Below, one piece after another: positions 162 through 25,079 of a stretch of DNA of 25,201 nt. The notes below the pieces were generated by a model, which saw only the letters and a list, made by a program, of their open reading frames with translations, was not told where the DNA came from and did not search any database. A program made the translations under genes and the position numbers. This DNA is from Bugula neritina (taxonomy: Eukaryota; Animalia; Bryozoa), in the NCBI GenBank assembly GCA_964035545.1, contig CAXIUT010000256.1:1-25201 (forward strand). Direction: 5' to 3'. How positions within the stretch are numbered: position 1 is the first letter of the stretch; every line of letters starts with the position of its first letter.

Positions 162-2359
162 ATGGGAGCATAATTTCAGCCATGCCAGGAAATGCCACAC
201 AATCCTCAAACATAAAAATAGGTCGAATCGTATCAGACAAGATCAACTAATTTGAAACAGTAGTAAGCACCATTTTGTTCTATAAGTCAATGCAGATCAT
301 CTAATATTGAATCGATTCCTCAGCCTAAACGAAAGAATAGTCATGCATTTGAGATGTAGGAGTTGAAGACTCCAGTCAAAAATAGTCGAAATCGTATAGT
401 ATCATTGAGAATGAGCAAGGAGTCATCGAAGAGGTTGATAGTCAAAAGTAAAAAAAAGATTAATTCTTAAGTGTTATATCAACGAAAGTTGCTAGCAAAG
501 ACACTTGTTTCTAGTACTATTGATTTGACATAGATTTGATGTTGTAAGATGAAGTTGATTCGACGGGTCAATCGATATATTCTCCAGAAACTCAGGATAA
601 AAAAATAAAAATGACGAATATCGTAACTAATTTATGTATAAACAATCAGGAACATTTGATTGATGTGATCAATTCGATTGAAAATCGATTTAGGAAGGGT
701 CGAATGGGAGCATCAGAATCGAAAGATCAAGAGTTAAATGAAGAATTATACTAGTTTCTTATTGCAGTTGAGAAAGCTTAGTTGGACTTCCTTGATATGG
801 TAAACAATTGACGATTTAGTTGTACCATAATGATGAGGAAATATATCAAAAAAAATCTAATTATGGATTTAGAAATAATATCGAGAGCAATGTGGTTGAT
901 TTGAAGCAGATAATAATGTAAGAGAAGGAGTTCAGAGGTAGCAAAGCGGTTAAATACTAGAAATACAAGTAGATCGGTTTAGATATGATAAGAAACAAGA
1001 AAGGTAAGATATTTATGATATATAGTATGTTTTTTTGTGATGGCTGGAGGGAAGTCATCTCGGTTTATGATAACATCTGGCGACGGATTAGTTTCTTAAG
1101 GTGTTAATGATATTACGGGTCGGATTGACAATTACCATTAAAGTATAAATAAAAATGTGTATAATAGTACTGATTGGAAATCTGGGTTGTAGTAGTCTAA
1201 TGATAGAAGTAGTTCTACTAGTCATAGAACTCATTCGAATAGAGGCAAATAATTCTAGAATTTGGATATTCCATCAGGAAGGAGTATATTTGCCATCATT
1301 ATTCATAGATTTATTGCACTAGCTGAAAGGTATAACTGTTCTATTGCTTTGTATTTGAGTGTGTCGCCTGATAAAATACATGAATTGACTGAGCAGATCT
1401 TTTCTATTACGTCAAAAACTGATAAATTAACAATTTATCCTTTTTCTAATAAAGTTATCGGAGCTATTGATTTTTAGGGTCAGTTAGTGATGGAAGATAA
1501 CTAGTTGCCTTCTTTGTGGTCGATTGGATCTGGAGATATTTGGAATGTGTTGTTGGGTGATAAGAGTTTAGGTTTTCCATCTATTGATGATTTGATAAGC
1601 GATGGATATGAATATTTATCTGTTTTGGGGACAGCTAATGCTCTTGAGAAATGTTTTGACTGTTTTGCTTTAGGTATGATGGAAGAGGGGAAACTAGATT
1701 GGAGCACTAAAGTGGTATAATCTTTTTAGAGGAATAAATATAAAGGAGAAGGCAACGTATAACCTAAAATGTTTGAAAATAGGCAGTCATAGTTATATAT
1801 ATGTGATCCTCAGTAGTTGGATAACTATGATGCTAGTGCTAGATATACTTTTATTAACAACTCTATTTTTAAATTATAGTATTTGCAAAAGGTTTTGAAA
1901 TCTACTGAGTGGGACAATATGCAATTACGCAAGAAGATCCATTTGGTAAAAAATAGACCACCTTTTTCAAAATATAGCAAAATTATATCTTATTAGAGAG
2001 ACTATACTGATATATTCAGAATGACAAGACTCTAAGAATAAAAAATATAAACAAGCTGCCTCGACAAAGAGATAAACAAAGGTATTCCATCTAAATGGAA
2101 AGTTCTTTTATGTGACAAAAGTGAATACTATCCTTTGGTATATAGCAAAGCTGAACATTCAGATATTTCTCATGCATCTAAAGCGATTGTTGATTTGCAT
2201 AGGAAATATTTGGGGATAGATAAGGGAATAGTGGAAATAGATCCTTATGTTAGTTTGGAAGGAGAGGATTTAGAGGAAATTAGGACTTAGTTAGAGGAAA
2301 GTCGACTTGAAGAGGATTAGGAAATATTTGTGCAATATCCTAGTGATGAATCTACTTGA
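162..2359 (+). CDS. Divergent UDP-N-acetylglucosamine pyrophosphorylase (UAP1/UDPGP family)-like protein with long N-terminal extension, about 711 aa; introns 514-533, 800-819, 1004-1025
   Basis: With TAR=Glu and three tiny introns the frame is open from ATG162 to TGA2357-2359. Motifs: IGLDMIRNKKVCFFVMAGGKSSRF (cf. GKVAVLLLAGGQGTRL), LDIPSGRSIF (cf. GLPSxKSLF), GSGDIWNVL (cf. GNGGLYxAL), GYEYLSVLGTANAL...WSTKVV, SYERDYTDIF (cf. KMEKFVFDVF), VEIDPYVSLEGEDLE (cf. EISPLVSYAGEGLE). Confidence 0.85.
514..533 (+). other. 20-nt spliceosomal intron
   Basis: GTACTATTGATTTGACATAG; required to join the UAP-like frames. Confidence 0.75.
800..819 (+). other. 20-nt spliceosomal intron
   Basis: GTAAACAATTGACGATTTAG; removes an in-frame TGA. 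Confidence 0.8.
1004..1025 (+). other. 22-nt spliceosomal intron
   Basis: GTAAGATATTTATGATATATAG; splicing restores KKVCFFVMAGG. Confidence 0.88.
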
Positions 2360-2416
2360 TCTTTTGTTCAATAATTAACTATTAATATATAAATTATGCT
2401 TAGTATTAAATATCAA

Positions 2417-3016
2417 TCAAAGAAGATAGCTTTCGTGTACTTTTTTCAATAAATAGGAATGCCATCCAAGGTTTAAGAATAGTTATTTGAGGAGAAGTAA
2501 TCTTTTGGCGCTTGAAGTTAAAATTAGACCTTATTTTTGTTTTTTTAGACAGAAATAACTGATCCAATACTCACTAAAAATACTAACTAGAGAGACGAGG
2601 ATTTTAATTTTTACTAAAACAAATCCAGTATTTGCAAGTATCTACAAAAAAGATCGTGATTTAACAGTTTATCCTTCAACTTTTTCTTCAAACTTTCTTG
2701 AGTAGTATGTGAAGCCGATTACAGATAAAGCCAATAGAGGATTAAAAATAACATGATTGAACATAACGTCATAGGCAATAGCTCGTTTACTAACAAGATA
2801 TAATTATCGATAGTTCTTCATATCTTTTGGGAAAACATCTCTGTTGAGTTAATTAAGGACTGATTTATTCCAGAAGAGTCCTAAAGGTCGACCAATGAAG
2901 ATCCAGAAGGGTAGTGGTGAGATATAAGATCCAATAGTTAGATTCTGGTTGTGAGCATAAAGTAGGATAGAAATGCTGGAAGCAAAGATTGCTGGTTGGA
3001 TGATGGCTTTGCTCAT
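2417..3016 (-). CDS. Small membrane protein, probable Mpv17/PMP22 family, 199 aa
   Basis: Uninterrupted ORF MSKAIIQPAIF... to TGA. Segments IGRPLGLFWNK, DVMFNHVIFNPLLAL and RLLLLKELFLNLGWHSYL resemble the Mpv17 GPxxHxWY, DQxxFxP and WNxYLS motifs. The family call is tentative. Confidence 0.6.
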
Positions 3017-3105
3017 ATCTTTGTTATTAGTTGTGATTGTTAAAATATTAATAGTATGATGAAAATTGATTGATAGCCAGTCGTTTTAATTATATATTTC
3101 TGACT
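3017..3105. promoter_or_regulatory. Putative bidirectional promoter, 89 bp between divergent ATGs
   Basis: AT-rich spacer between head-to-head genes; inferred from position only. Confidence 0.45.
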
Positions 3106-3905
3106 ATGAAAAAAACCATAGTTGTATTATTGTTGGTTTGTCTGGTTATTTCTCAGGATTGGATTAGTGAGAAGTCAGCTAGCCAAAGCGATGGCAATCT
3201 TCAAGAAGAGGATCTCTAGAAAGAAAATGTTAAATAGTAAGGATTTAAATAGTTAGACAGTAAATTGAAATTTAGAAATCTAATCCCAAAGAAGCCAAGA
3301 AATAATAAGAACGAAAAGAAAAGCCAGAAGAAAAAAAGGGTAATTCTGTAAATGAAAAAACAGCTGGTATGGAGAGTCCATTTGCCAAGGCTAATAAGGG
3401 ATAAATTAAAAACAAAGGTCCCTCTACATCTTATGACGATGAAATGAGAAAAAATGAATAACACTAAGATGATAAAGGCTCCTATGGTCATCAGCAACAC
3501 AGAGAAAAGCCTAAGCATATGAAACATCGTGGTAAAAAGATGTATCGTCCTATGTCTGATGATGAAGAAGAGTCCTTTTACTATAGTACTTAATTTTTCT
3601 TGTTTGTTGGTGTTCTGGCTTTGGCTGCTTTGGTTGGATGTTGCATGAAGAAGGGTAAAAATTATAATGGAGCTAGAGCTATGAAAAGAAGATAAAGAAG
3701 AGTTCAACCTAGGGAGTTGTAGAGAAGATAGCCAAGGCAAGTGCAAAGAGTTTCTCATCAACAATATGCTGTTAACTCTAAAAGTCAGATAGAGAATCAG
3801 ATAATGTTCCATCAGAGTGAGTTATACCGACTTCAAAATGCATCTAAATAAGATTCTGAGAATACAAATAAAATTATGATGAGATAATACGAACATCAGG
3901 AGTGA
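3106..3905 (+). CDS. Hypothetical type I membrane protein, about 259 aa; intron 3237-3256
   Basis: Signal peptide MKKTIVVLLLVCLVISQ, then a K/E-rich ectodomain, a TM segment FFLFVGVLALAALVGCC and a basic tail. A 20-nt GTAAGG...TTAG intron restores the frame to TGA3903-3905. Confidence 0.8.
3237..3256 (+). other. 20-nt spliceosomal intron
   Basis: GTAAGGATTTAAATAGTTAG; joins the signal peptide to the downstream frame. Confidence 0.7.
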
Positions 3906-4456: not shown

Positions 4457-4612
4457 TTTAGATGACCATCTAAGTCAGTTTCGGTCACAAACTGATTTAT
4501 CAAATTTATTCAAATTCACATTTTCACGGTTTTAATTATTTGAATATTTAAGAATATCTTATATTTTTATCCAAATTTAAAATAATAATTTAAAATACGT
4601 ATTTAGATTCAA

Positions 4613-6760
4613 ATGAGGAGTAGTCTTGTACTTATCACCTTAGTCATTCTTTTGATGTTTTTAGGATAGACATAATCTAAAGCACCATTTATCTAGTTTG
4701 ACTAAATACATCAGACTCGTTCTTAGTTCTAATTCAACTTGATCATTAATTAAAATAGAAATACTCCCATCATCTTCTTTCAGTTTAGTTAAAATAGAAC
4801 ATAAAAAATAATGCGAGGAATAGTAGAATAAGCCTTTAGACTTTAGCCCGATATTTCTTTTGCTTTGTTTGTTGATTGCAGACAATTTTAGCATGATCTT
4901 AATAGAACTTTAAGGACTTGTCAAGGCTTTTAGGAGTATTTGAAAACATATGTTCCTCTAACAGATGAAGAGCAAGAGTAGAGAAGATTAGATGATCCCT
5001 TTTTTGTATTTGATTTTTTTTCACCAAATCCTATGAGGATAAAGGAGAAAGGTCATGTGATATCAAAGAATCATGATATGCAAAATCTTCGTTCTTTGGA
5101 CGTAAGCTTTAGTGGAGAGTTTCTAGCGAAAGTTATCAGGAATTAACTGCCTGATTTTATTTCTTACATTGAAGATCAAAGAGATTTGTAAGACTTCTTA
5201 CAGATATCATCGCAATTTAGAACATCTAAGGGTCCTAAGTTATTATTCTTTGATCAGAATTTATTAAGTCCTTTCTTTCTTAAAAAATTGGCTGTTAGAT
5301 TGGAGGGATGGTTCAGAATAGGAGTTTCTGATTCACCTAAAATGGTCTCTAAATTTAAATCTAAATTTGACAAGTTAGTTCTCTTATAATATGATTTCTA
5401 ATCTCAAAAATATGACACTCAATAAATACCTTATGATTCAAATGATGGTTTTAATAACATTCTACAAAATAAGTTGATTACTAGTTATACTAATATCAGA
5501 AAACCAAGAGATCTTCTCTTAGATTTCTAGCATAAATAGTCAGTTATTCATAATATATCAAGTTTGAAACAAATAAATTAGTTGATTTCTCATGGAAGAA
5601 TCATTTTATTGGAGGTTAGTCGGGAAGATGATGTCTTTTAGTGTCCAAGTTTGTTAACTCCTCGATAAAAATATGATGTACTTTTCAATTATATTTGTTT
5701 GAAGAGAAGTAAAAGTGCTTAATTTTTGACTATTATGCAAGCTCATCCTCAGAAATGGGATAATAAGATATTTTTTATTGATGGGTCGATAAAAAATACT
5801 AAAATTCTTCATAAAGATTCAAATTTATATGATTAACTACCTCAAACTTAGGCAAGACAAAAAATAACAACTTAAAAGTAGAGTCAGATTTGTAATGAAG
5901 GAGCAAGAGCTAGTCAAAGATAACCAATTTTATACTACTTTAATGATAAAACTCATTCAACTCCTCTACATCTATTGAGGTATTTCGGTTCTTTAACAGA
6001 AGTGAATTCTCTTCTTTATTTTTGTCAGTTTTTGATTCCCGACTAAGATGTTCGTAACACTTATCAACTATCATAAAACGTGATATTTACTTTGACTGTA
6101 CCAGATAAATAGGGTCGTTCTCAAAAGGTATAGCATACAAAGATGTAAGACTTTTTAAGTTTGAAGATGTTTCTTAGATAAATAGCTATAAGTAGAATAA
6201 TGAGAATATACTAACATCGAATTCTAAGAAATTAAATTCTTGAGATAAGTACTTCATAGTAGTTGACTGAGAGATGTTTTAGTCATAAATGTATTATTGC
6301 ATTGATAGAAACAGGTACTTTTCATCAGGAATCTTAGATAAATATATTGAAATAAATGCAGATATCTTTTAGTGATCAACCTTTTAAATATTATTGGATA
6401 GATGGAATTTGTCACTACTAAATTGGTAAACAACTTAAGTTTGCTAAAAAAGGAAGTAAACTTATAGATCGTTCTTATTTGTTTTTGTTTAGTTAAAAAA
6501 ATAATCAATATGCTCTTTGGAAAGGAAATAAATTGAGTCAGTATTGGAATAAAAAAGATACCTTTAGATGGGTTAAATCTCTGAGAAATTAAGATAACAT
6601 CGGAAGAATCAAATTTGGATTAGATATTGAAAACAAAAAATGTTAAAAGAAGTAAGTAGTCAAATAAGATGATAAACCTAAAGATTCAAAAGGTTCAAAA
6701 AAAGATAGAAAATAATCAAGAAAATAAAAAAGTAGAGAAGTAAACGAAGATGAGCTATGA
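4613..6760 (+). CDS. ER-resident thioredoxin-fold (PDI-like, no CxxC seen) protein, 715 aa
   Basis: Intronless open frame with signal peptide MRSSLVLITLVILLMFLG and C-terminal EDEL before TGA. Internal segments LPDFISYIE...GPKLLFF...FLKKLAVRLEGWFRIGV and CFSHKCIIALI...PFKYYWIDGICH resemble non-catalytic thioredoxin-like domains. Confidence 0.75.
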
Positions 6761-6784: not shown

Positions 6785-7951
6785 TCATCGATAATATTAT
6801 CTCCCAGAACCAGTTCGAGAGTTCCAGCATGGAGTTTATATTTTTTTGAAGTCAAGATAGTTATCATGTTTTTGAGATTTATTTATACTGAGTCTGCTTT
6901 TAGGTGTTCCTGAATATTTGCTATCTTTTGAGTTATTTAGTTAATCTACTATGGTTGTTTATGATTTTTTTGATTTTTTTGATGGTTTTGGAGGTTTATG
7001 TATTTTTTTATTTACTGGAACTGAATGATATTCAAGTGAATTTTCATCTACTATTGATTCACTTAATTTTTATATAACATTTGGTCTTAGTTTTCTTTTT
7101 TACGTGGTTTTATCTTTTTGTTTTATCAATTAATTCCATGATTATTTAACATATAAATTTTAATTTTGTATTTTTGATTTTTTTGATGATTTTTTATTTT
7201 TGTTATTCGATGTTTGAGAGATATAACTTGGTTTAGTTTAATGTTGATATTATTGACTTGATAAATATGAAGAATCTATATATTTTTAACAATAATAGCA
7301 TATTTATTAACCTATTTTAGCTCTATTCAACACCATTTATTGTTGGATATTAGATAAATCAATTTTGACTTGATATAGTGACTATCTAAGTATTTTATAC
7401 ATTTTATTGATATGATTTCTCAATATTTAACTTTGATAGTTACCAGCTTCTTTGACAATATTATCAAGATTCCAATTATTATCTTATTTTTTTATTTATT
7501 AATCAAAAATACGAACTAATTCTACGATTGTATTGGTATTTCCTTTATTTATTTTCATCATCATCTTGTCTAAAACTGAATTTATACCATTTACTTTTAT
7601 TTTCTAGCAGTATAAGTCATAGAGATATCGAACTGAAGACATTAATTGAATGGTTTTTTTCTTATAGCTTTCATAGTTTACTGTTCGATAGTCATCATTA
7701 AGAATAAAATTATTTTGAAGAAGTGTGTTTGGATTGTTATTTTGATTTGATAATATTTTTTTAAGTTAGGTGTTTTATTTTTTTAGTAATCTGTTCTACT
7801 TTGTCAGTTGTTGGCATAATTAGTATAGTTATTTATCTTTAAGTTGTTCGCTAAATTAGCTGTGTTTTCTAGGAGGGGGAATTTGACTTTTTCCTCTTTC
7901 TTCTCTCCAGTATTCCTTGGCGTAAAGGCTTGTGCCTTCAAAATGACTCAT
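6785..7951 (-). CDS. Hypothetical protein, 388 aa, N-terminal coiled coil and K/S-rich C-terminus
   Basis: Continuous TGA-free frame from ATG7951 (MSHFEGTSLYAKEYWREE) to TGA6787-6785. Confidence 0.7.
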
Positions 7952-8241
7952 TATTCGTTATAAATTTATAGTTATACTAAAGTAAATAAGAATATTAACA
8001 AGTTTTTCAAATATAATTATCAAAATAAATACTAAAAATGTATTAGATATTATTTCAATTTTGTCCCAAAAGTATTTATTAAACTATTTTTTAAAAAATA
8101 CCTTTTTCCCAAATACGCTGAAAATATATAAATGTCAATAAAAACAAAATGACAAGAACTATACTTTTATATTATTATCAGATGATTGTATTTGTCAATA
8201 TTTTTTGATATTAATTAAGTTTATATTCTAATACTAATAAG

Positions 8242-10725
8242 ATGGGTCAGATATTCGTTAATGACCAGGTAAAGGGTATGGTAATATAACTGCCTCCAAC
8301 TAATATAAAGCAACAAATATCTTATACACCACTTCTTATATGTAAAAGTCTTGCAGTTCCTTTTTATTAAAAGGTTTTTTACTATGAAAACTATAAGAAG
8401 ATATAAGTTACCTATAAGTTTTTTGGAAAAGTATTCATACATCTGGAAATTAATAAATAAAAACCTAGACAAGAAGCTGGATGTCCTCTAACATTTGGAA
8501 ATGAAATAGTATACGGTTATAAGTTTAAGAAGAATGACAAATCTGATAAAATACGTCCTAATAAAATATTTTTTCGTCGAAAGATCTTTTCTTCCTCATT
8601 TCAACCTCCTAGATCTCATCATAGAAATTAAAAAATGAGGTCTAATGTAAAATCAAGAAAAAAATCAAAATAGCATCATCAATAAATTACATCAAGTATT
8701 CCAGTTTATACTCCTAAATAAGAACTTCTTCGTAAGCTTGCATAACTGAAATTACTAAGTAAGTTAGATGTTGGAGCTAAAGTAGTTAGAATAATTGATG
8801 GGTCAGATGGAATATTGACTGACCATTATATTGAGTTTTACTCGTAAGTTGCTCTTTAGAAAGGATCTTTTTAAAAAAACTAACCAAATGGAAAACAAAA
8901 AGTTTATTCTACACTAACTGATAAAGGATTTAAAGTAGATAAATAAACTTTATTAATAGCTTATAGTGTCTTTCAAACAGGATATATAGTAAAACTAAAA
9001 AAGAAGTTGATTCATGATGAGTAATAGATCTCATAAAACCATTCAATTAAAAAGATGGTGAGATCATTTGAATAATAAATAAATTTTATAGTTTGCAAAC
9101 TGGATGGGATGACAAATATGATGAGTGCTATTCAAAATTATCTTAATTATCGAGAGATAGATAAGGCGATGTAGAAGTTTTAGGAAAATATGGCTAATAT
9201 GTAAGAAAATTAACGTTTGTAATATGCATAACAGATGGAATTTATGTTATCTAAGTATAATTATTATCATTCTTTTTAAAAATAGGTTAGTTCTTTTATC
9301 AGTTCAAGTCGATCTTCTCTGATGGAAAGTAAAACTATTACTACAAGTCGATTCTAAAAAAGAAATAAATCAGAATCTTCTAATTAATCTCATGATAGTA
9401 TAAATAGTTTCAGATCTTCTAGATTTAGTTCAGATCATGAGGCTAAAAGTCCAGTATCACCTGTGACTATATCACCTAAATCTAATCTTGGTTTAAGGTT
9501 TTCATAATCTGAGAGTCCTAGACATTTTGTAGGTCAATAAAGAGATAATTCAACTACAGAAAGTCAGTATTTAAAAGATAGTAAGTAATCGCCTTATATA
9601 ATGTGGGAGACAGCTTTAGATAGACTTAGAAATGCAATAAATGAGAATGATAAAATAGCTATGACAGTATCATTAACTTGTCTTAAAAATTTATCAGTTT
9701 TGCCTCAATTTGAAACATAGGTACTTTTTGGAAAACTACTGATGGAGAATGGAAAGACTAAATATTCAAAGATAGTATTTGAACGTTTGCTTTATCATAA
9801 AAAATCAAATAAAGATGCTTTTATTTGCAGTTAGGTTGAGTGCATGATAGCTTATCTTTATCATTTGAAAGGAGAACATCAAAAAGCTTTGAGTCATTAT
9901 GAAAAAGCAGTTACTCATAGGTTTAGACTTAGAAATTATTCAAAAAAAACAGTTATTGTATTTAACAATATAGCTGTTATTTAATTTTAGCTTGAAAGAT
10001 TTGAGAAAAGTTTACTTTGGCTGCATAGAGGTTTTAAACTCGGTTAGTATTGTGCAGATTATGAATTGGTGATGAGAAGCAACTATGCAATGATTTTAGC
10101 TGAAAAAGGGCAAGTAAAATAGGCTAAAAATTAGATGGTCAAGACACATAAAAATATCTAGCCTTACTCTAATATGTAAATATTATGTAAGTTTCATAGT
10201 AATTTCGGTTACTTGTAGTTGCTATAAAATAATTTTGAGAAAGCTAAGGCTAATTTTGAGATAGCTTGTTAGTTATAGAATAAATATTTGATACCTAATG
10301 GTTACAAATATTCATTTTTTCTTCATAATAATATGGCTATCTATCATACTAAGGTTACTACTCATCATAAGAAGGCAGAATGGAAAAAGGCTGCTTCTCA
10401 TCTAAATAAAATATCTAATCAGTTGGCAGATATTCATGGTCTCACAGCTGTTAAAATTCATTTCAATTTTGGTAAAATAATGAAAGAAGATTATAAACTT
10501 GATTAATCTTTTTTCCATTTTACAGAATGTAGAAGAATATTATTACGTCTCAAGTAGAGTTATATTACTCAATATTTGGATAAGATTTAAGCATAAATTT
10601 AAAAGATGGATGCTCTAAGGATAGATGAGTAATCTGAGTAGTCATCATACGCCAACAAGTTATCAAAGGTTTCAAGGAGATCTTTGTTAAGTAATAAACA
10701 AAAATAATCTAAAATTCTTAATTGA
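8242..10725 (+). CDS. Tetratricopeptide-repeat (TPR) protein, about 827 aa; start uncertain
   Basis: About 2.5 kb TGA-free frame. TPR-like helices at about 9720-10550 include MIAYLYHLKGEHQKALSHYEKAV, VFNNIAVIEFELERFEKSL and HSNFGYLELLENNFEKAKANFEIA, preceded by a Ser-rich linker at about 9290-9570. Confidence 0.8.
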
Positions 10726-10733
10726 TATGCATA

Positions 10734-11114
10734 TCATACTATGAAGTATATCCCTCCTATTATCGAACATACTCCTACCAACTGTGTTATATTTAGAGGT
10801 CGACGCTTCAGTATGCTCTCAGTTATGAATGTTACTGCTACAGTCAGGGCGTTGGCTGTGATTGAAGAAAATTGTTAAGGATATTGGCCTAACAGATAGC
10901 CATAGAGCACTGAGCCGATGTTATTGATTGCAAGGAAGAGTAGGAATTTCCATCTTTTAAGGATTTTGAAGAGAGAATTGATGCTGAAGTCTGTTGGGTT
11001 GAAGTCTTTTTAGTCAGTGTGGGAATATTTTTCAATGAAGGGATTGGTTCCTCCCCAGAACAAGCTGACTACGAAGAAAGGTAGCAGGTCTTTGAAAGTG
11101 ATAGTGTCCAACAT
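10734..11114 (-). CDS. TMEM234: TMEM234 (UPF0546) family membrane protein, 126 aa
   Basis: VSLFWGGTNPFI, WKFLLFLAINNIGSVLYGYLLG and ANALTVAVTFITE match the TMEM234 signatures WGxTNPF, NQxGSVLY and NSLTFxxT. Confidence 0.85.
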
Positions 11115-11177
11115 ATTAATATTTAATATTTATTAAATAAATAACTTAATACAATAGAATTATGATGTTATTATGTT

Positions 11178-12324
11178 TCATTTTCTTTTTCTTGGTGGAG
11201 ATAAGATAGCTCTTCTTTTGACTTAGATTTGTTCTTCGAATTCTTGTATTCTGATTAGAAAGTTTTGTATTTATCCAGCGATGATTCTTTATTTCTTTTA
11301 ATTTTATTAATTTTATTTTGTTAAACTGTCAAGCATATAATCTTGTCCTTCTTAGATCTATCTATACATCTAGTTGTCAATAACAAAGATAGAAGGGTCG
11401 ATAGAGCTAAGCATTTCTGGTTTTATTCTAGTTTATACTATTACATTGTATTAGTTGGGAGTTGGTTAGGGAAGTATGGGACTGATTTTATATTTTTATC
11501 GTTTATTATTTATGTATTTTAGTGCTTTTTATTTATTTGATTTTAGTCTGATTAGTAATTTTTATAAATGTTCTTGCCAATTGGGCGTACTGATATCAAA
11601 ATTTTATACACTATATAGTCCTTCCTATTTATGTTTTCATTTAGTCAATGGCATCTCCACATCTTTTATAGAGATTATTATAGATAACTTTTTCCATTGA
11701 ATCTGAAAATCTATTCATTTATTAGATTTAATTAGATTTTTGTAGTTATTCTTCTTTGACTATTTATAGTTATCTTTTTCTTGTGTTCCATTTATTTCTT
11801 ACTATTTATACATTTTATATTGAATTTGATATTATCTTTTATCTATCTTTTAATTTTTTTTAGCTTTTATTCTAAAATAACTCTTTTTATATTTTTTATT
11901 ATTTCTATTTCTTCAGTTCATCAGTTTAGTCATCTATTTGGTTAAGTAGATCAGTATGAGTTTATATTATTTTTTGTTTTTGGATCATGATGGCTTATCT
12001 GGTTTATTGATACTTTTTTTCAAACATCTAACTTGAATTTATTTTTTATTTTGTTTATTTCTTTACTATTTCTATCTTTTCTTTGCATTATTGGATTTAG
12101 GTATCAAGTAGAATGAGTTGCTAATTATAATTTTATTGGATATTTATTCTTCTACCTGTAAGAGTATCAAGGATAGATATTTGAGTATTGAGATCGTTTC
12201 TTAAATTATCCATTTGTTTGAATATTATTCCAGTTTATGCATACATTCTTTTCTATCTTATATTAGTTTCATCTATTTTTAAAGGGCTTGAGGATTCTTC
12301 AATTTGTATTGGATAAATTAGCAT
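11178..12324 (-). CDS. Hypothetical coiled-coil protein, about 374 aa; intron 11590-11611
   Basis: Heptad-rich E/K/Q frame from ATG12324. A 22-nt GT...CAG intron removes an in-frame TGA and leads to the C-terminus RRAILSPPRKRK-TGA. Confidence 0.7.
11590..11611 (-). other. 22-nt spliceosomal intron
   Basis: GTGTATAAAATTTTGATATCAG on the minus strand; removes a TGA and restores the coiled-coil frame. Confidence 0.6.
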
Positions 12325-15169: not shown

Positions 15170-17965
15170 ATGTTGACAAGTTCCTCACTATTGAAGAAGA
15201 GCTCTTCGATTATGAATAAATAAAATTCAAACTGGAATGAAGAGTACAAATCATTGAAATAGTAAATATATCTATCTGACAAAGTAGCGAAATTTCTTGA
15301 TTGTTTAGATCATCATGCTGATCCTAAAAATAATTGTGAATACTAGAAATCATCATCTTCATCTTAATCATCAATGAGTCATATATGTCCAAATAAACAT
15401 ATCTAGCATGATTATTTTTGTAAGGGATTTTCTAAATTATAAATAAGTCAAAAACAAAGATTTCTTCTTAGGATTTACTCTTTATTAGAAGGATTTTAAA
15501 GTTTTTAACATATATATTCTAAATAATGTGGAGCAGTTAGATGTCAATTGAAGATAGCTACTTGTTTGATTTCTCAATGGTAATAAGTTGAAGTTAATTT
15601 AGATTACCAGCTGAAAATAGTTACGATAGTTGGGTAAAATGTTGATAAAAAAATAAATCTTTAATAATATTTACCTAGATGTTCTAAAAAATAAATATAT
15701 TTTATTACTTTTTAGTATGTTAGTCCTCTTTTGTTGAATAAAGAGTCGATTTAGTTGAGAAGTAGAAAATAGTAAGAACTTGCTTTTGTTGAGTTTTAAA
15801 GAAAAAATTTTGAAATATCAGCTAAAATTCATGCTGATAAGTTGATAAAACAACTAAAAAGACATAAATAGTTTGAGTAAAAAGTAAAAAAAAAGAAAAA
15901 TCTTTGATATTTTCTACTCCTTATTCCCAATAAATAACCAAAAAAACATCAAATCAAAATTTATAATAAATAATGATAAAAACTTAAAGTTATCTAGATA
16001 ATGATCTTTTAAGTATGATGCCTGCTAGTTCAGATCTAGAATAATTTATAACACTAAAATAAAATGAAAATCTAACAATTAAGATGAGTTCGATAAATAT
16101 TTATAATTATCATTGCAAAATAATACTATTTGATGGTTCTAAAAATATGAATGTTGATACTTTATTGTAGAAATACTAAAATAAACATGATATGGTTTTT
16201 AGATTAAATCTACTTGATTAGTCAGTTAAAAATTAACAATAAGATAGAGATCAATCTAAGATGGTTAGTTTTTATCAGAAGATAATATGGAATAATAAAA
16301 TATATAGTCAGATTTTGGTTGCTAAGGAAATTTCTTTTGGAAAAACAAATTTAAGAGGAGTATTCGATTTTTATAATATTGACAATTCTAAAAATATATC
16401 TTTGATATAAAAGATGAAAATAATTTTAAATTAAGTTAAATCTGATAAAATGGTTGTTAATATTTAGATATCTTTTAGTCCACAAAAATAGTTTAACCAA
16501 GAGACTTACATAAGTTACTTATAACATTTTCAAGATGTATTTAATGGTGATACAATCATATTTTCTAACTAATAAACTAAAACTAATAAAAGAGATTTAT
16601 ATTCAGTATTAAGACAAAAAATACCACCTTTGATTTATAGATAAAATTCATAAGATTAAAGATCAGGGTGATAATTTTGATTTATTTTAGAGTTAATCTG
16701 AAAAAGAGAAGAAATAGTATAATAGAATTTTCAGATAATCTTTGGAATAAGATAATTCTGATATTGATTATTTTTTAAGACATAAATATTTACTTTATCC
16801 TCCTTCTTAGAAAGTGGGTGTTCTTATGAAAGATCATTTTTTATGGAAGAATTGGAAAAGAGCTGAAGATGGAGGTCTTGTAGGTAGTAATTAAGAGTTA
16901 GTATAAAAACAAAAAAGCATTGCTAGAGTTGTTATTAAAAAATTTGGACAAAATATTCTTCAAGGTAAAAATATAATAAACTTCTCTTTACCTGTTGTTG
17001 TCTTCAAAAAAGAGTATTTATTTTATTATTTAGGAGTCATCTTGAATCAATTGCTAGAACCTATCTATACTCACCTGTATTTGTCGAAAAAGCTGCTTCA
17101 ATATCAGATCCTCTTGAGCGAATGAAATACTCAATAATAATAATGATGACTTAAAATGCTTTATCAATACACAACTAAAAACCATTTAACCCGATTCTTG
17201 GTGAGACGTATCAAGGTTGGATAGATGGGTGTCCTATTTATCTGGAACAAATAAGTCATCATCCTCCGATCTCAGCTTATTATCTTGTTGGTCGTGGTTA
17301 TAAGAAATATGGATCGATCGAGCCTCGGATTAATATTGGGTTGAATAAGGCTAGTGGGTATAGTTAAAATTCTCATTATATATAATTTGATGATGGAATG
17401 AAGATTTAGTATATATTGTCGAAAATTGTTATTGGGGGATTGCTTATTGGTGAAAGAACTTTTAAATTTTAAGGCAAAAGTAAATATTAAATAATATAGT
17501 TTATGCTTTTGATAGGAAACATCGATTTTTTGCTAGTATTAAATTTGGACCGATTTAATAAGGATTTTTTGGTTCATCGCCATAGCCTCAAGACTACTTT
17601 CATGGTACTATCTATGAGGTAAAACCTTAATTTTAGGCTTATTTTGATTAATAGATTCCTCGAAGATTTCCAGAGGAAAAACATCTGGTTAAATCGTTAG
17701 CTTCTTTGATGGAATATGGAATAGTTATGTAAATATGGACAATGAATAGGTTGTTAATTTTAAAAGTGATTTACCTTATGAATTTGATATATAAAAATAT
17801 CCTTTGCCTTCAGATTCAAGGTATAGAAATGATTTGAGAGAATTAATTTTGGGAGACCTTGAAAAAGCTCAAGAGTAGAAGGAGAGAATGGAAGAAGTTC
17901 AAAGAAATGATAGAAAATTAAGAGAATAATATTAAAAAAAGATGAAAGAATAAAAAAATAAATGA
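15170..17965 (+). CDS. Oxysterol-binding protein (OSBP/ORP) with long N-terminus (PH-like and possible START-like regions), about 918 aa; introns 17014-17033, 17480-17499; apparent frameshifts near 15890, 16635 and 17706
   Basis: Clear ORD motifs: NFSLPVVVF, KPFNPILGETYQG, EQISHHPPISAY, PLPSDSRYRND, AQEEKERMEEVQRNDRKLRE. Joining the N-terminal part (15170-16640) to the ORD requires two frame corrections and is inferred. Confidence 0.85.
17014..17033 (+). other. 20-nt spliceosomal intron
   Basis: GTATTTATTTTATTATTTAG; splicing restores the OSBP segment SLPVVVFKKESHLE. Confidence 0.9.
17480..17499 (+). other. 20-nt spliceosomal intron
   Basis: GTAAATATTAAATAATATAG; splicing restores FEGKIYAFD. 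Confidence 0.85.
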
Positions 17966-18083: not shown

Positions 18084-20323
18084 TCATTTATTTTCTTTGG
18101 ATTTTTCATTTTTTGTCTAAATCTAATTTTATTTTGAGGTGTCCTGTTTTTTTTATTGAGATTATTATGATTATTTGCTTTCTTTACTTTCTTTTTCTTT
18201 CTTGTTTTATTGTTATATCTCTTCAGTATTATCTTTTTCATCATAAGAAGTACAATTTTAACATTTAATCTATCTAGATTTTTTATCTTCTTTATCTTAT
18301 TTAGATTATCTCTTTTCTTATTAATTATTTTTATCTTTTTTCTATTCACTTTTATCCTATTAATCTATGGTCTTATTAGAATTATCATCAGCTATTTTAT
18401 TAAAATCTTTATTTTTTACTTATGATTCAACTTAAGAATTTTTCTTGTTATCCTCTTTTTTATTTTTATCGCTCTATTTATCATTAACATTGATATTTTA
18501 ATCTTTCTTCTAATCTTTCTTTTAATCTTTCTTTTCATTGTTCTTTTATTGTTTTAATTTATCTTATTTCTTTTCCCTTTTAACAGCATTTTATTTATTT
18601 TTAACATCTTTTATCAACTCATTTTTTTTATTCTTCGAATTATCTTTATCATTCTTACTCGTTTAAATTTATTTCTTGCTTTTCTTTTTACTTTATTAAG
18701 ATTTATTTTAATCTTTATTATTATTGATATTTTTATTTTTATTTTATTAATTTTTATTATCTTTAGAATCTTCTTTTTTTTTAGTTGGTTCTTTCTTTTC
18801 CTTTGATTTATTTTTGTTTTTTAGCTTTTCATTTTTTCCTTTATTGATTTTTGTCTTTTTTTACTATTTATTTTTGTCTTTATTTACTTTTTTATCTTTT
18901 TTTGTTTATTCTTTTTCTTATTTTTCAAGATTTTTTTGAATATCATCTTTTTTATTCTTTTCTGTTGAATTAGTTTTCAAAGTTTTCAAAGTTTATTCTT
19001 TCGTAGTTTATTATTTATCATTTTTAGTTTTGTTCAAGTCTTTTTTAATTTGCTTAAGAATTTTGTTTTATTTTGATTTTTCAACTTTATTATCCTTAGG
19101 CTTACTTGGATTTACATCTTTATTTTTCATCTTTTATGCTTTCTTAAGAGTACTCTAAAGTGTATTATTTGCCTATTTTTAATGGCTTTATTCTTTCTTA
19201 ACTTTAATTTTCTCTTTAATAGTTTTTTTATTTTACTTCTATTTCTTCATATCTTTAGTTTCTGTTCTTAATGTTTTATCTTTTAAATTATTTTAATCTA
19301 TTTTGTTCTCTGAAGCCTTAGAATTTTATTTCTTGTCAGCACCTTTATCATTGCTATCAATATTTTATTTCTTTGAATCTTTTTTAGATTTTTATTAATC
19401 TTTATTTTTTTTCTTATCATTTTGTACTTCTTTATCCTTACTATTTGACTTTTATAACTACTTTTTATCTTTTTTATCTTTTTGAGTTTATTTTTTTATT
19501 TATTGAGATGATTTCTCTCCTTTTTTCTTATTATTTTTATTCTTTTACTTTGTTTTTTATTCTTATTTTTGAGTTTATTATTTATCATCTTTCTTTTTAT
19601 TAAAATCATTTTTGATCTTTTAAAGAATCTTATTCTATTTAGATTTAACTTTATCATCTTTTGATTTAATTTTTTTATTACCTGATTAAATTAACTCTAA
19701 AATTTTAACCTTTTATGATTTCTTAAGATTGTTCTTTGCCTTTTTTTATTAAGCTTATTATTTCAAAGCTCTTGCTTTTTATAATCTTACTCTTTTCTTT
19801 ATTATTTTTTATTTTTATTTTTATGATTCTTTTTTCTCAACTTTTTTAACTTTATCCATTAGTTTCTTTTTGACAAGTTTTTATTTAACTTCTTTAGCCA
19901 TTTCTTTCTTTTGATTTTGTTTAGATTTAGATTTAAAATTTACTTTAGGACTAGATTTTTTGTCAGCTTTTTTCTTATCAACAGGTATGACTTATATATT
20001 ATTATCTTACTTATCTTCTTTTTTTGATTTTTTTAATTATTAAACTTTCCTCACTTTAACATTACTTGTTTTTTTCTTTTTTATTCTTTAACTTTTTAAC
20101 TATCTTTCTTTTAATTTTGTTTATTTGATTTATTTTTATCAGAAACATTTGATTTATTCTTTTTTTGATTTTTTTATCCTTTGAATAATTCAGATACGTA
20201 TAGTGGAAGATCACAATTTCTAGTTTATGAAGTTTTAGGATCAAGACAAGCTTCATAGTGAAAATATCCTAAGAGAGAGATAGCTCCTATAGCTGCTAGA
20301 ATGGGAATCAATTTATTCAGCAT
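18084..20323 (-). CDS. Signal-anchored, extremely Lys/Glu/Asn/Asp-rich low-complexity protein, about 746 aa; apparent frameshift near 20070
   Basis: Hydrophobic N-terminus MLNKLIPILAAIGAISLLGYFHY, then about 2 kb of strongly A-rich sense strand. The frame was checked at several points and ends ...KSKENK-TGA. Confidence 0.7.
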
Positions 20324-20507: not shown

Positions 20508-23296
20508 ATGCGATCGTAAGTGATGGGCTAACATAGATAGTCTCAGATATTTCAACTATTCAAGAAGGACATGTAGCCTGATCAATCGAATAATCCTCAC
20601 TTGAATAAAAACATGGGTTCGATATTTAATCATCTCCATATAAAGGGGATTATTGAAAACAAGTTCAATAAATAAAAATTCGATAGAACATACTAATTTC
20701 CTGCTAACTACAAGGAGGCTAAAATTCATAAGGTAGCTTCTAAATATGGCTACGCTAACAAAAATTTAAAAAATGGTTAGGAGGTGCCTATTTGTCCATG
20801 TTGTTAAAATTATCCATCAACGATCGATATTCCTCTTTGCTATTCTACTCATCCTGGACCACCAGTTGAAGGCAATGATGTTTTTTTGTTGCATACTGGA
20901 GTATCGATGTATTTTAGTTTTATCAAAATGGTGCTTATTTATTTGGTTATTCGGTTTTTAATTGTTGATATTTATAATATCGTAGTTAGCGCCAATGGAC
21001 ATTATTGTTCTAGTTTGAGTGAATTTGCTAGCGAGTGTACATTTACTTTGTCTGGGTATAATCTTAAAAATGCTGAAGATCAGTCTAAAATCAATCCTTT
21101 GGCTATACTTAATTTGGTGTTGACTTTGGTATCGATTATTTACTTTTTGTTGTATAGGAAGGCGACGTTCAAGTTGCAGAGTTGGCTTGATTTCAATGAT
21201 ATAAGTCAGTAAGATTTTTCAATATTGATTGAAAACATACCATCTTTTCTCTTTCAAAAAGGTGCGACTAAAAATGATATCAGTTATAACCATGAGTTGA
21301 TTTTAAGAAATTTGATAGAGTAGAAAATAAAGAATTGGTTTGTTTAGTTGAATATATATCGGAATGAGGACTAGATAAGTGAGGGGATTGAAAAAGATTT
21401 TTGGAAGGTGCTTTATTCTAAAAGAAAGGATGAAATTAAGATGGATTAGATAGTGACAAGTATAACTTTATGTTATGATTTGACTCAATTATAAAACATC
21501 AATAAATTGAGAACCCAATTGATATAAGAATTTTAGGAGGATTAAGATTAAAGTATGGAAATATTTCAATAAACTGATAGATTGGAGCATATACCTAATC
21601 AAATAGAAGTTATTAATGAAGAATATATCAATACTTGTTACAAATTTGCAATAGACAACTCGCCTTCGTTCAATTTGTCTCATTTCACAGGAAAAGCATT
21701 GGTTTCATTTCAATATCAGCACTACCGTGACTATTTTTTGAGAGAATACTAAAGAAACAAATAATTTTTGAGAATCAATAAAAGAAATATAACGATTAGT
21801 CAGGCCAGTAAACCCAGCGATATATATTGGTTTAATATGAAGGTGACAGATAGCTAGCGTAGGAAAAATATCATATATTCTTATATTGTGCTATTGATGT
21901 TGCTGATAATATCGTTTGTATTGTTGCTGGCGTTGTAGTTTTGGAGAACATCGGCCAATGAATCATCAGTTAATACTTCATAGCTGAAAGATCAGGTTAT
22001 CAATAAGTTGGTTATCTTGTTTATGACTATTCTTGTCAATATTATCAACTATATGTTGAGTTATTCGATTGATTTGCTAACCAATGTTGAAAAGCATCTG
22101 ACAAAAACAAACAGATTGCGATCGCTGATCATCAAAACCATCATTACTCAGACTATCAATACCATGTTTATTTACTATGTGTTGTATTTGATATGGCCGA
22201 TCAATCCTTTAAGCGATTTCGGTCTGGTTAACAAGGTTATCAGTTTGGTGGTGATATCTGGATTCATCAGTGTAGCTTTATAGATATTTGTGCCTTTTAA
22301 ATATCTGAGTGATCTGATCAACAGCTACAGGTATAGTTAGGAAAAACCTATTAAACTCTTTCAGGTGCAACTCAATCATGCGATTCAGTTCCCCTAGTTC
22401 AACTTTGCTGTTCAATATGCATTCTATATCGTTTTTACTTATGTTGTTTGTTTTTATGGATTTGTTGCGCCAGTAACTGCTCCTATTCTTATTGTTATCT
22501 TTTTTATTATGTATTGGGTTGATAAGTATAATTTGTTGAGACGATTTGCATATCCTGTTGATCTAGGTCCTGGACTTAATAGAATGATCTTCCAGATCTT
22601 TTAGATTTCTATGTTTATGTCTGCTTTGGGGTTCTTTGTGTGGGATGGCAATGTTCACTTTGATTCTAATGGAACTTCTTAAGTGCTTAAGATAGTTAAT
22701 CTTGCCATTGCTACTATCTACATTGGAATATCTTTGATTGCTCCTCATAATATCGCTAAAAGATCTTTTTTTAGCAAGTTTAATTTTAACACCACCAATA
22801 TACTTCACTTCTTAGAGATAATAAGTTTAAAAAGACATATTATCGACAGAGTCCTGCTACTTCTTGTCTAAAATAAGCTAAAATTGGTTAAGTCAGTGAA
22901 AAAGTAGCTGTCTATCAACATGAAGCACCTGACCCAGTCTTTATTAAACCAAACTAATACGATAAATATCTGAATCTTGATCCTGAAACAGTCAAAATAG
23001 AACACTACAGTAAAGGATAAGTTGAGTACTATCAAATCGTGAATAACATCAGTTATGACTAGATAGCTGCCGGAATAGCTGGAGATCAAGGACTAGGAGG
23101 AATGTTTGCTCAAAATCAAGGAGGAAACAGGGTGAACCAAGGCGGTCAGCCAAATCCAATGAACAATCCGATGGGAAACATGATGGGCAATCCTAATTCA
23201 ATGGGCAGCATGGGAAATCCTAACTCGATGGGCAATCCTAACCAAATGGGCATGGGCAATAACAACATGAATCAAGGGAATCCATTTGGTTTTTGA
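20508..23296 (+). CDS. CSC1/OSCA/TMEM63-family calcium-permeable stress-gated channel-like protein, about 929 aa; apparent frameshift near 22760
   Basis: ICPCC, TGVSMYFSFIK, DFSILIENIP, FTGKALVSF, ASKPSDIYWFNM (cf. APEPxDIxWxNL), PEFNFAVQY, YWVDKYNLLRR and multiple TM segments; ends in an M/G/N/P/Q-rich tail. Confidence 0.85.
23144..23293 (+). repeat. Degenerate coding tandem repeat (MGNPNS/MGNPNQ units)
   Basis: ATGGGCAATCCTAATTCA / ATGGGAAATCCTAACTCG / ATGGGCAATCCTAACCAA. Confidence 0.75.
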
Positions 23297-23400
23297 TCAT
23301 GAAAAACAATCTTCATTATTTTTATTGAATAATAGCATTCATTATTTTATCATTGCTAAAGTCAAATTATAACAGTACATTAATTAATTGATTTAGCAAG

Positions 23401-25079
23401 ATGTAGAAGTAGCTGCATCGACACTACACTACCTACGATACTAATGGAGGTATATATGTTGATATGTAGAGTATAACCGTCGTGGAGTATTTTAGGTTCA
23501 GTCTTAGAGACATGCTTATGAAATAGATGACTATCGGAGGATTTAAATATTTAATGATAAGTTTTTTAGTTTAAAAGAAATTGATAATACCTTTGCTGAT
23601 AGTCCTGGAGTGAAGAATAATCAAAAATATAAAGATATTCAGCAAATATTCAAGAAATATAATTAAGATATTATGCCAATAAGAGGGCAATCACCTTATG
23701 GTTTTCATGCGAAGAAATAGATAATGGATATAACGATGTCGATGTTTATTTTGATGGTGTTATCTCCATCAGTTGAGACAAAGATGACTATTTTATAAAA
23801 AACTCATGAGTGGCTTTTGAAATAACTTAATCGTAAAAATTAGAGAAAACCTAAAAGAAATCTATTGGTTGAGTTGAATTAGTTATTTAAATAAAAATAA
23901 ATTAAATAGATTAAATAATAGGATTTGATTTTACCTACTTTCAAATCAAAAATATAGCTTTAAGATTATTTGAAGAAAGCGAGGACAAGATATCGAGATC
24001 GAGATGCGCCTGCGTTTTAGTTGGAAGGGTATAATACTCGAAAGATTAATATCAATCATCGGAATATGGCGGATGAGTAGAAAGATAAAAGGAAGCGATT
24101 TGCTACTGTGAATTATAGTAGAGTAAAGGATTATTCTCTTTTGAGTAGTGTGAGAGAACCGTATTAATAAAATTTTATTCAATTTCAAGAGAAAATGACA
24201 CAAAATTTAGTTACTATTGAAACTATGCCCAATACAACTGAAGACAGGAAGTAAAATATAATATCTAATACTGAATAAATCAATAAGCAGCCACTAACTA
24301 GATCAATTCATAATTCTAATGGAGAACTTCCATCCAATGAAAACTTGTTATAAAATAATCGACATGATTTTGGATATTAGTATTAATACTAGTATGAGGA
24401 ATCAGAAAAAGAGAAGAAGGGTAAGTTGGATAAGAAACCTAAGGGATTTATACAGAGGAATCCTCATCCTAATGATGTTGAATAGATTCATCCTGTTTTT
24501 AATAAAATGGAACAGTATATTTATAATAAAAATAATTTGAGAAATAGATAGGAATAAAATTTTGTTCAGAGAGTGTCTGATTGGGCGGGTACTAAATCTA
24601 AATTTAAAACAGAACTTGCGAGAAAGATAGAATCAAGTAAAATATTTTTTGGGAATAAATAAAAAGGGAGTGAAGTTAAAGATGAGATCAATCAGTTTAA
24701 AGTTAATAATGCCATTAGACATGGTAGAAAATTTATTAGAGAAGATTTTTCAGGTGAAAGACTTCCTACTGAGCAGGGAATGTCGATATATGCTAGAAGT
24801 AGAAATAAAGTTTCATCAGTGAGGACCGCAAGAACATTGGAATCTATTCTTAAAGAACATAGTAGAGAAAAGACTTCTGAAAGTTTGATGGAGGAGGTTG
24901 AAGATTTAAAGGAAAAGTTATCTAAGAAAAAGGTGTATGCTTCTCTTGCTCTCTTGAAAAAGTCAATTGTTCCACCTTAAGAGGTCGAAGTTTCACTTAC
25001 AGGAAGGCTAGAGAAACCAATAGGTCTTTTATCTAATCCTTTGATGAAGAAAAAGAAAAAGAAGAGAAAATTGACTTGA
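23401..25079 (+). CDS. Hypothetical protein, about 552 aa, with C-terminal poly-Lys; intron 23450-23469
   Basis: Begins ATG TAG AAG TAG (MEKE...). One 20-nt intron gives a TGA-free frame ending LLSNPLMKKKKKKRKLT-TGA. Confidence 0.8.
23450..23469 (+). other. 20-nt spliceosomal intron
   Basis: GTATATATGTTGATATGTAG. Confidence 0.75.

What the first reader, a model, noticed from the sequence alone, without database searches (positions are those of the whole stretch)
162..25079. Non-standard genetic code: both TAA and TAG encode Glu, TGA is the sole stop
Seen: all 14 gene models end in TGA and in-frame TAR codons recur throughout them. TAR falls where Glu is expected: kinase hinge IS[TAA]YANDG (13290; cf. 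MEYANGG), UAP SY[TAG]RDYTDIF (1994; cf. KMEKFVFDVF), OSBP FKF[TAA]GK (17470) and AQE[TAG]KERMEE (17876). The run TAT-TAG-TAT-TAA-TAC-TAG-TAT-GAG-GAA (24375-24401) interchanges TAG, TAA and GAG as YEYEYEYEE. The Gln-containing tail at 23102-23296 uses only CAA/CAG. Known: TAR=Glu is the peritrich nuclear code (table 30), unlike TAR=Gln in Tetrahymena and Paramecium.
Basis: partly seen in the sequence, partly recalled or inferred. Interest (0 to 1): 0.8.

Follow-up and report, generated by a model that had tools for sequence, protein, structure and literature searches.

The report
Ciliate code: TAA/TAG mean glutamate
This 25-kb stretch is a complete ciliate macronuclear chromosome whose genes read TAA and TAG as glutamate and stop only at TGA; the reading is correct, but this code is already catalogued as the peritrich nuclear code (NCBI table 30).

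Summary

**What the window is.** It is a whole macronuclear chromosome with a C4A2 telomere at 1-92 and a G4T2 telomere at 25121-25201. With TGA as the only stop, reading frames reach 839 aa. With all three stops, the longest is 202 aa.

**Main test.** I fetched orthologous, syntenic chromosome pieces from related ciliates in public metagenomes and compared them with the window codon by codon.
- Against one relative (4,284 codon pairs, 57% amino-acid identity), window TAA faces GAA/GAG 101 times, TAA/TAG 31 times, Gln 7, Lys 7 and Asp 7.
- Window TAG faces Glu 21 times, TAA/TAG 21, Gln 9 and Asp 7.
- Likelihood picks Glu for both codons. For TAA the next best are Asp (-175) and Gln (-251 lnL). 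For TAG they are Asp (-57) and Gln (-62).
- All the other fetched relatives agree, except one five-pair TAG sample.
- The same method recovers 59 of 60 standard codons.

**Supporting counts.** GAR+TAR totals match between the two species (434 vs 436). Charge balances only if TAR is acidic. Strain-level differences include TAA/GAA exchanges in both directions.

**Stops.** Eleven gene ends lie at TGA, usually at the same place in the relative. No TGA faces Trp.

**Not tested.** No decoder tRNA lies in the window or the fetched loci. The organism's identity could not be checked. First readers flagged the same code on other pieces of this genome.

The parts
1..92 (.). Left telomere, (CCCCAA)n
   Evidence: Read directly. 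The relative's contig L019 starts with the same repeat and a similar subtelomere.
25121..25201 (.). Right telomere, (GGGGTT)n
   Evidence: Read directly.
1019..2359 (+). UDP-sugar pyrophosphorylase-like gene with 8 TAA and 12 TAG in frame; stop TGA at 2357-2359
   Evidence: Weak Pfam UDPGP hit on one piece, E 0.016, below the curated cut-off. HSPs to L019 cover 1205-2335. TAG at 1994 faces GAA in the relative. The gene ends at TGA in both species.
2417..3487 (-). Conserved gene of unknown function; stop TGA at 2417-2419
   Evidence: HSP 3037-2426 to L019, 60% identity. The ORF ends ...SYLL* here and ...SYQN** in the relative.
4544..6760 (+). Secretory or ER-type protein gene (hydrophobic N-terminus, C-terminal EDEL) with 34 TAA and 19 TAG in frame; stop TGA at 6758-6760
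   Evidence: ORF and translation. HSPs 4682-6736 to L019, 57-61% identity. It ends NEDEL* here and RSDEL* in the relative.
6785..8134 (-). Conserved gene with 25 TAA and 4 TAG in frame; ORF bounded by TGA at 6785-6787
   Evidence: ORF. HSPs 7954-6905 to L008 and L019.
8209..10725 (+). TPR-like protein gene with 36 TAA and 18 TAG in frame; stop TGA at 10723-10725
   Evidence: HSPs 8242-10704 to L008/L019, up to 68% identity. The relative's ORF pieces carry weak TPR Pfam hits. The stop lies near the same place in both species.
10734..11117 (-). TMEM234-like gene; stop TGA at 10734-10736, conserved
   Evidence: HSP at 74% identity. Pfam TMEM234 on the relative's product. TGA faces TGA.
11178..12368 (-). 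Conserved gene of unknown function, rich in TAA; stop TGA at 11178-11180. Its frame switches are probably indel errors.
   Evidence: HSPs in frames -3, -2 and -3. One-base indels at 11620 and 12216 in contigs of other runs. Strain differences TAA>GAA at 11354 and GAA>TAA at 12021.
12423..14497 (+). Kinase-fold-like (probably pseudokinase) gene; tandem stop TGA TGA at 14492-14497
   Evidence: HSPs at 65-75% identity to L008, L012, L017 and L018. 77 related ORF pieces in the protein database. Weak profile hits to Tribbles and AAK1 kinases, E about 0.2. TAA at 13290 faces GAG, TAA and GAA. The double TGA is conserved.
14500..15106 (+). Short conserved gene; stop TGA at 15104-15106, conserved
   Evidence: HSPs to L012, L016 and L017. 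TGA faces TGA in L012 and in L008. The start coordinate is approximate.
16634..17965 (+). Oxysterol-binding protein gene in three frames; candidate 20-nt GT..AG intron at 17480-17499; stop TGA at 17963-17965
   Evidence: Pfam Oxysterol_BP E 1.4e-13. PDB ORP1/2/3 hits. A profile of 32 homologues matches four segments. Intron candidate. The stop is conserved.
18084..20138 (-). Lys-rich low-complexity ORF with 71 TAA and 14 TAG in frame (12% of codons); ORF bounded by TGA at 18084-18086
   Evidence: ORF and codon counts. Composition K 33% and TAA 10%. No orthologue was aligned.
20508..23296 (+). OSCA/TMEM63-type (RSN1_7TM) channel-like gene; frame change near 22757-22817 is probably an indel error; ORF ends at TGA 23294-23296
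   Evidence: Pfam RSN1_7TM on one piece, E 1.3e-5, just below the curated cut-off. Relatives P0001-3 and loci L001-L007. In L005 both HSPs share one frame.
23463..25079 (+). Conserved gene containing the Tyr-TAR repeat at 24375-24401; ORF ends at TGA 25077-25079
   Evidence: HSPs 23427-24050 and 24510-24638 to L005 and L007. The repeat lies opposite an acidic stretch in the relative.

Best explanation
The window is a complete macronuclear chromosome of a ciliate. Its nuclear code reads both UAA and UAG as glutamate and uses UGA as the only terminator, which is the code NCBI lists as table 30 (peritrich nuclear code).

Shown here:
- TAA and TAG are abundant sense codons.
- They occupy positions that hold GAA/GAG in orthologues.
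- Genes end at TGA.

Inferred from what is known of such codes:
- Decoding is by tRNA-Glu-derived tRNAs with UUA and CUA anticodons.
- The release factor eRF1 no longer recognises UAR.

In this AT-rich genome (28% GC) the reassigned codons have become the majority Glu codons. They are 59% of Glu codons in the aligned coding sequence, against 26% in a relative with 42% GC.
For: **Structure.** Telomeres lie at both ends. TGA-only ORFs reach 839 aa, against 202 aa with all three stops.

**One pairwise comparison with independent sites.** This is the window against the orthologous chromosome L019+L008, 4,284 codon pairs.
- TAA faces E 101, TAR 31, Q 7, K 7 and D 7.
- TAG faces E 21, TAR 21, Q 9 and D 7.
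- lnL for TAA: E best, D -175, Q -251.
- lnL for TAG: E best, D -57, Q -62.

**Other loci.** E also wins for both codons in L001, L002, L005, L012, L017 and L018. The only exception is a five-pair TAG sample in L003.

**Partner spectra.** Partners of TAA and TAG mirror those of GAA and GAG. 37% of the relatives' Glu residues face a window TAR, against 8.8% of Gln and 7.2% of Asp.

**Control.** The same method infers 59 of 60 standard codons correctly. The one miss is ATG, because leaving out the only Met codon removes all Met data.

**Composition.** GAR+TAR is 434 in the window and 436 in the relative over the same columns. K+R is 14.4%. D+E from GAR alone is 8.8%, and 14.8% once TAR is added. 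The relative has 14.4% against 14.6%.

**Strain level.** Four differences in contigs of other runs touch TAR: TAA>GAA, GAA>TAA and two TAG>TAA. Most of the other 33 coding differences are synonymous.

**Stops.** 11 gene ends lie at TGA, several aligned TGA to TGA, one as a conserved tandem TGA TGA. No TGA faces TGG.

**Literature.** UAR=Glu is described for Peritrichia and treated as a single origin (PMC10553269).
Against: - No decoder tRNA or eRF1 gene lies in the window or in the 21 fetched loci, so the mechanism is inferred.
- There is no RNA or protein evidence. No RNA run holds the sequence.
- A deep-homology test on the OSBP domain (profile of 32 homologues, 11 TAR columns) did not discriminate: K 6.3, E 5.4, Q 4.9 summed log-odds. 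The TAR codons fall in poorly conserved columns.
- TAG has fewer informative pairs than TAA and faces Gln somewhat more often (9 of 74).
- The organism's taxonomic position was not tested.
Confidence: 0.96

Rival explanations
1. Classical ciliate code (table 6): TAA and TAG encode glutamine, as in Tetrahymena and Paramecium, which have the same C4A2-type telomeres.
For: C4A2 telomeres. TAG faces Gln 9 of 74 times in the relative. At 17876 the window's TAG faces CAA in two relatives.
Against: lnL is -251 (TAA) and -62 (TAG) relative to Glu. Real CAA and CAG codons face Gln in 46-73% of pairs, whereas TAA faces Gln in about 4%. This code would give 4.4% Glu with 9.4% Gln and leave basic residues about 5-6 percentage points in excess of acidic ones.
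Confidence: 0.01
2. Split code as in Oligohymenophorea sp. PL0344: TAA = lysine and TAG = glutamate.
For: It is a known oligohymenophorean variant (PMC10553269). The deep OSBP profile marginally prefers K at TAA columns, 4.8 against 4.2 for E.
Against: Window TAA faces Glu 101 times and Lys 7 times. K is not among the four best assignments, so it lies below -313 lnL. Real AAA faces Lys in 66% of pairs. TAA and TAG also exchange with each other, both between species and among strains.
Confidence: 0.005
3. Ambiguous code: besides TAR=Glu, TGA is also read as Trp or Sec inside genes, or TAR also terminates in some contexts. Other first readers proposed this on other pieces of this genome.
For: Unchecked first-reader notes s1-435656 and s1-435657. 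Such codes exist in Condylostoma and Blastocrithidia (PMC4967479, PMC12153298).
Against: In about 4,300 aligned codons of this window, every TGA inside an HSP is either a conserved stop or lies in an out-of-frame or non-coding extension. None faces TGG. All 11 gene ends examined are at TGA. The apparent frame breaks are explained by 1-nt indels.
Confidence: 0.03

Closest known systems
Peritrich nuclear code (NCBI translation table 30), reported for Campanella umbellaria and Carchesium polypinum (PMC10553269; from my own knowledge also Vorticella and Opisthonecta)
   Same: UAA and UAG both mean Glu and UGA is the only stop. The host is a ciliate with oligohymenophorean-type C4A2 telomeres.
   Different: Nothing in the code itself differs. 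Membership of the organism in Peritrichia was not tested. TAR is the majority Glu codon here (59%), far more than in the GC-richer relative (26%).
Ciliate, dasycladacean and hexamita code (table 6; Tetrahymena, Paramecium, Oxytricha)
   Same: UAA and UAG are sense codons, UGA is the stop, and the telomere type is the same as in Tetrahymena.
   Different: The meaning there is Gln. Here it is Glu, and Gln is rejected by 251 lnL units for TAA and 62 for TAG.
Oligohymenophorea sp. PL0344 code (UAA=Lys, UAG=Glu; PMC10553269)
   Same: UAG=Glu, UGA is the stop, and tandem UGA follows some genes (here TGA TGA at 14492-14497).
   Different: UAA is Glu here, not Lys.
Blastocrithidia nuclear code (table 31; UAR=Glu, UGA=Trp; PMC12153298)
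   Same: UAR=Glu.
   Different: That organism is a trypanosomatid, not a ciliate. UGA is Trp and UAA doubles as the stop there. Here UGA terminates and never faces Trp.

Membership tests
Peritrich nuclear code (table 30) | UAA encodes glutamate | tested here: met
   180 informative codon pairs against one orthologous chromosome give E best, D -175 and Q -251 lnL. E also wins for TAA in all seven other loci analysed, tying with Asp in a four-pair sample.
Peritrich nuclear code (table 30) | UAG encodes glutamate | tested here: met
   85 informative pairs give E best, D -57 and Q -62 lnL. E also wins in L001, L002, L005, L012, L017 and L018.
Peritrich nuclear code (table 30) | UGA is the only stop and is not a sense codon | tested here: met
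   11 gene ends lie at TGA, several aligned TGA to TGA with the relative. No TGA faces TGG. The test covers this window only.
Peritrich nuclear code (table 30) | Glu-type tRNAs with UUA and CUA anticodons | not testable with these tools
   No tRNA gene lies in the window or in loci L001-L018. L019-L021 were not scanned. First-reader notes s1-434002 and s1-435052 report tRNA(CUA) elsewhere in this genome, but I could not read those sequences.
Peritrich nuclear code (table 30) | Organism belongs to Peritrichia | not testable with these tools
   There is no rRNA or other marker in the window. Run organisms are coded. Cluster look-up gave no accession or name.
Ciliate code, table 6 (UAR=Gln) | UAA and UAG encode glutamine | tested here: not met
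   Q is 251 (TAA) and 62 (TAG) lnL units worse than E.
PL0344 code (UAA=Lys, UAG=Glu) | UAA encodes lysine | tested here: not met
   TAA faces Glu 101 times against Lys 7 times. K lies below the fourth-best assignment at -313 lnL.
Mesodinium code, table 29 (UAR=Tyr) | UAA and UAG encode tyrosine | tested here: not met
   Only 4 of 476 Tyr residues in relatives face a window TAR.
Blastocrithidia or Condylostoma-type codes (UGA=Trp) | In-frame UGA at conserved Trp positions | tested here: not met
   No TGA/TGG pair occurs in the aligned coding sequence of this window.

The most novel reading that the evidence does not exclude
The organism might not be a sampled peritrich but a separate lineage that acquired UAR=Glu independently. 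Alternatively, it might combine UAR=Glu with occasional sense use of UGA elsewhere in its genome, as other first readers suspected.

A milder reading is better supported by the data. Under AT pressure the reassigned stop codons have overtaken GAA/GAG as the main Glu codons (59% against 26% in a GC-richer relative with an orthologous chromosome). This gives a natural pair of species for studying how a reassigned codon spreads.
Probability: 0.07. Interest if true: 0.6.

Novelty: already known. Interest (0 to 1): 0.2.

Why it matters
It matters for practice, not as a discovery. Any annotation of this genome must use table 30. Under the standard or bacterial code every gene breaks into pieces, and under table 6 about 6% of residues would be miscalled Gln instead of Glu.

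The comparison also shows how far a reassigned codon can spread. In this AT-rich species TAA/TAG carry most of the Glu load. An orthologous chromosome from a GC-richer relative is available in public metagenomes for comparison.

Tried and rejected
- **tRNA and Rfam scans** of the window and of loci L001-L018 found nothing, so the decoder could not be examined.
- **Deep-homology (Codetta-like) test.** I ran one exhaustive search with the 62-aa OSBP piece. I built a profile from 32 near-full-length homologues and read the emissions at 11 TAR columns. The result was not discriminating: K 6.3, E 5.4, Q 4.9. The TAR codons sit in variable columns.
- **Pfam on stop-free pieces** gave only weak or partial hits apart from OSBP. 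PDB hits have no retrievable sequences, so residues opposite TAR could not be read from them.
- **Organism identity.** A paper search for the accession numbers of related contigs found nothing. Cluster look-up returned no accessions or names. Run organisms are coded.
- **RNA evidence.** No RNA run holds the sequence.
- **First tblastx tally.** It included a wrong-frame HSP for L002. I replaced it with a best-HSP-per-position filter.
- **'Kinase' label.** The profile search of the PDB gave only E about 0.2 hits, all to kinases or pseudokinases. The label stays tentative.
- **Considered and rejected:** Gln, Lys, Tyr and ambiguous-stop readings (see rivals).
Full report
**What the window is.** The sequence starts with (CCCCAA)n at 1-92 and ends with (GGGGTT)n at 25121-25201. 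It is therefore a complete 25.2-kb macronuclear chromosome of a ciliate with Tetrahymena/Paramecium-type telomeres. GC content is 28%. It holds no tRNA gene and no Rfam family.

**Check of the observation.** If only TGA is a stop, the longest frames are 839, 822, 739 and 685 aa. With the three standard stops the longest is 202 aa, and that one is an antisense artefact of a purine-rich gene. In 13 long frames, TAA plus TAG make up 6.6% of 6,113 codons. GAA plus GAG make up 4.4% and CAA plus CAG 2.8%. Pfam and PDB confirm an oxysterol-binding protein gene. They give weaker hits for a UDP-sugar pyrophosphorylase and an RSN1_7TM/OSCA-type channel.

**How the meaning of TAR was tested.** The tools do not accept proteins read through a stop, so I searched with stop-free pieces.
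- A 134-aa piece of the channel gene found three related ORF pieces at 65% identity. Their contigs and four JGI metagenome loci were fetched.
- A 102-aa piece of the kinase-like gene found 77 related ORF pieces, some on long contigs. Fetching those gave syntenic loci from several lineages.
- A further look-up gave L019. It begins with the same telomere repeat and a similar subtelomere, and it is collinear with the window from the first gene to about 14.7 kb.
- These relatives have 41-43% GC and also carry in-frame TAR.
- I aligned window and loci with ungapped tblastx. At each position I kept the best-scoring HSP in collinear orientation, then read off codon pairs.

**Result.** Against one relative (L019 plus L008) there are 4,284 codon pairs at 57% amino-acid identity, and each site is counted once.

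| Window codon | Glu | TAA/TAG | Gln | Lys | Asp |
|---|---|---|---|---|---|
| TAA | 101 | 31 | 7 | 7 | 7 |
| TAG | 21 | 21 | 9 | 3 | 7 |

- I built a substitution matrix from the standard codons of the same alignments. With it, Glu is the maximum-likelihood meaning of TAA (Asp -175, Gln -251 lnL) and of TAG (Asp -57, Gln -62).
- Every other locus analysed gives the same winner for both codons, except a five-pair TAG sample in L003.
- Pooled over loci, TAA's partner codons are GAA 83, GAG 78, TAA 37, TAG 22, AAA 12 and CAA 8. This is the same spectrum as for GAA itself. 37% of the relatives' Glu residues face a window TAR, against 8.8% of Gln, 7.2% of Asp and under 3% of every other residue.
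- As a control, each standard codon was treated as unknown in turn. The method recovered 59 of 60. The one failure is ATG, which is expected because removing the only Met codon removes all Met data.

**Independent internal checks.**
- Over the same aligned columns, GAR+TAR is 434 in the window and 436 in the relative. The TAR share differs strongly, 59% against 26%.
- Basic residues (K+R) are 14.4% in both species. Acidic residues reach this level only if TAR is counted as acidic: 8.8% + 6.0% in the window and 12.0% + 2.6% in the relative.
- Contigs of other public runs that hold nearly the same sequence differ at a few dozen places, and 37 of the 40 listed fall in coding sequence. Four of those touch TAR codons: TAA>GAA, GAA>TAA and two TAG>TAA. 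Most of the rest are synonymous.

**TGA.** Eleven gene ends lie at TGA, mostly at or next to the homologous place in the relative. Examples are ...NEDEL* against ...RSDEL*, and ...SSL** against ...PSL** with a conserved tandem TGA TGA at 14492-14497. Every other TGA caught inside an HSP lies in an out-of-frame or non-coding extension. None faces TGG. Other first readers suggested, on other pieces of this genome, that TGA is also Trp. This window gives no support for that.

**What did not work.** A deep-homology test in the style of Codetta gave no decision. It used an exhaustive search with an OSBP piece, a profile of 32 homologues and the emissions at 11 TAR columns. The result was K 6.3, E 5.4 and Q 4.9, because the TAR codons fall in variable columns. 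No tRNA was found in the loci scanned and no RNA run holds the sequence. The decoding machinery and expression are therefore inferred, not shown. The organism could not be named, because run labels are coded and the database gave no accessions.

**Comparison with what is known.** UAR=Glu with UGA as the sole stop is NCBI table 30. The literature reports it for Campanella and Carchesium and treats it as a single origin in Peritrichia (PMC10553269). The other candidate codes fail:
- Table 6 (Gln), table 29 (Tyr) and the PL0344 code (UAA=Lys) fail the test for TAR.
- The UGA=Trp codes fail the test for TGA.

The finding is therefore correct but already known. The scan's first readers flagged the same code on at least eight other pieces of this genome.

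**Side observations.**
- The frame switches inside several window genes coincide with 1-nt indels next to homopolymers in contigs of other runs. The relatives keep a single frame there. These are probably assembly errors rather than introns.
- A real intron candidate of 20 nt (GT..AG) lies at 17480-17499.
- An adenylate kinase gene follows OSBP in three relatives but is absent from the window.

Noticed in passing
window 12683, 13110, 13379; 11620, 11854, 11883, 12216, 12348; about 22757-22817: Frame switches inside genes coincide with single-base indels next to homopolymers in contigs of runs X2 and X23. The relatives keep one reading frame across the same places. These are probably assembly indel errors in the window, so gene models that place introns there are likely wrong.
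   Followed up: partly
window 17480-17499: A 20-nt GT..AG candidate intron in the OSBP gene moves the reading frame by +2, as the protein alignment requires. Relatives carry an in-frame TGA at the matching place.
   Followed up: partly
whole window against L019+L008: Glu codon usage differs strongly between orthologues. TAA+TAG are 59% of Glu codons in the window (28% GC) and 26% in the relative (42% GC), while the total number of Glu codons is the same (434 vs 436).
   Followed up: yes
window 1-170 against L019 1-85: The relative's contig begins with the same telomere repeat. The distance from telomere to the first ATG (MGA...) is about 60-70 nt in both, so the chromosome end is conserved between species that share only 57% amino-acid identity.
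   Followed up: partly
L008 14795-15223, L012 15069-15227, L017 6307-6501; window about 17970-18084: An adenylate kinase gene lies just downstream of OSBP in three relatives. It is absent from the window, where a Lys-rich low-complexity ORF follows instead.
   Followed up: no
window 14492-14497: A tandem stop TGA TGA ends the kinase-like gene and is conserved in L008. This recalls the UGA enrichment after genes described for another oligohymenophorean (PMC10553269).
   Followed up: no
window 4544-6760: The ORF has a hydrophobic, signal-like N-terminus and ends in EDEL before the stop. The relative ends in SDEL. This looks like an ER-retention signal, so the product may be a resident ER protein of unknown family.
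   Followed up: no
window 18084-20138 (minus strand): A 685-codon Lys-rich ORF in which 12% of codons are TAA or TAG. Read with TAR=Glu it becomes a Lys/Glu-rich low-complexity protein. No orthologue was aligned.
   Followed up: no
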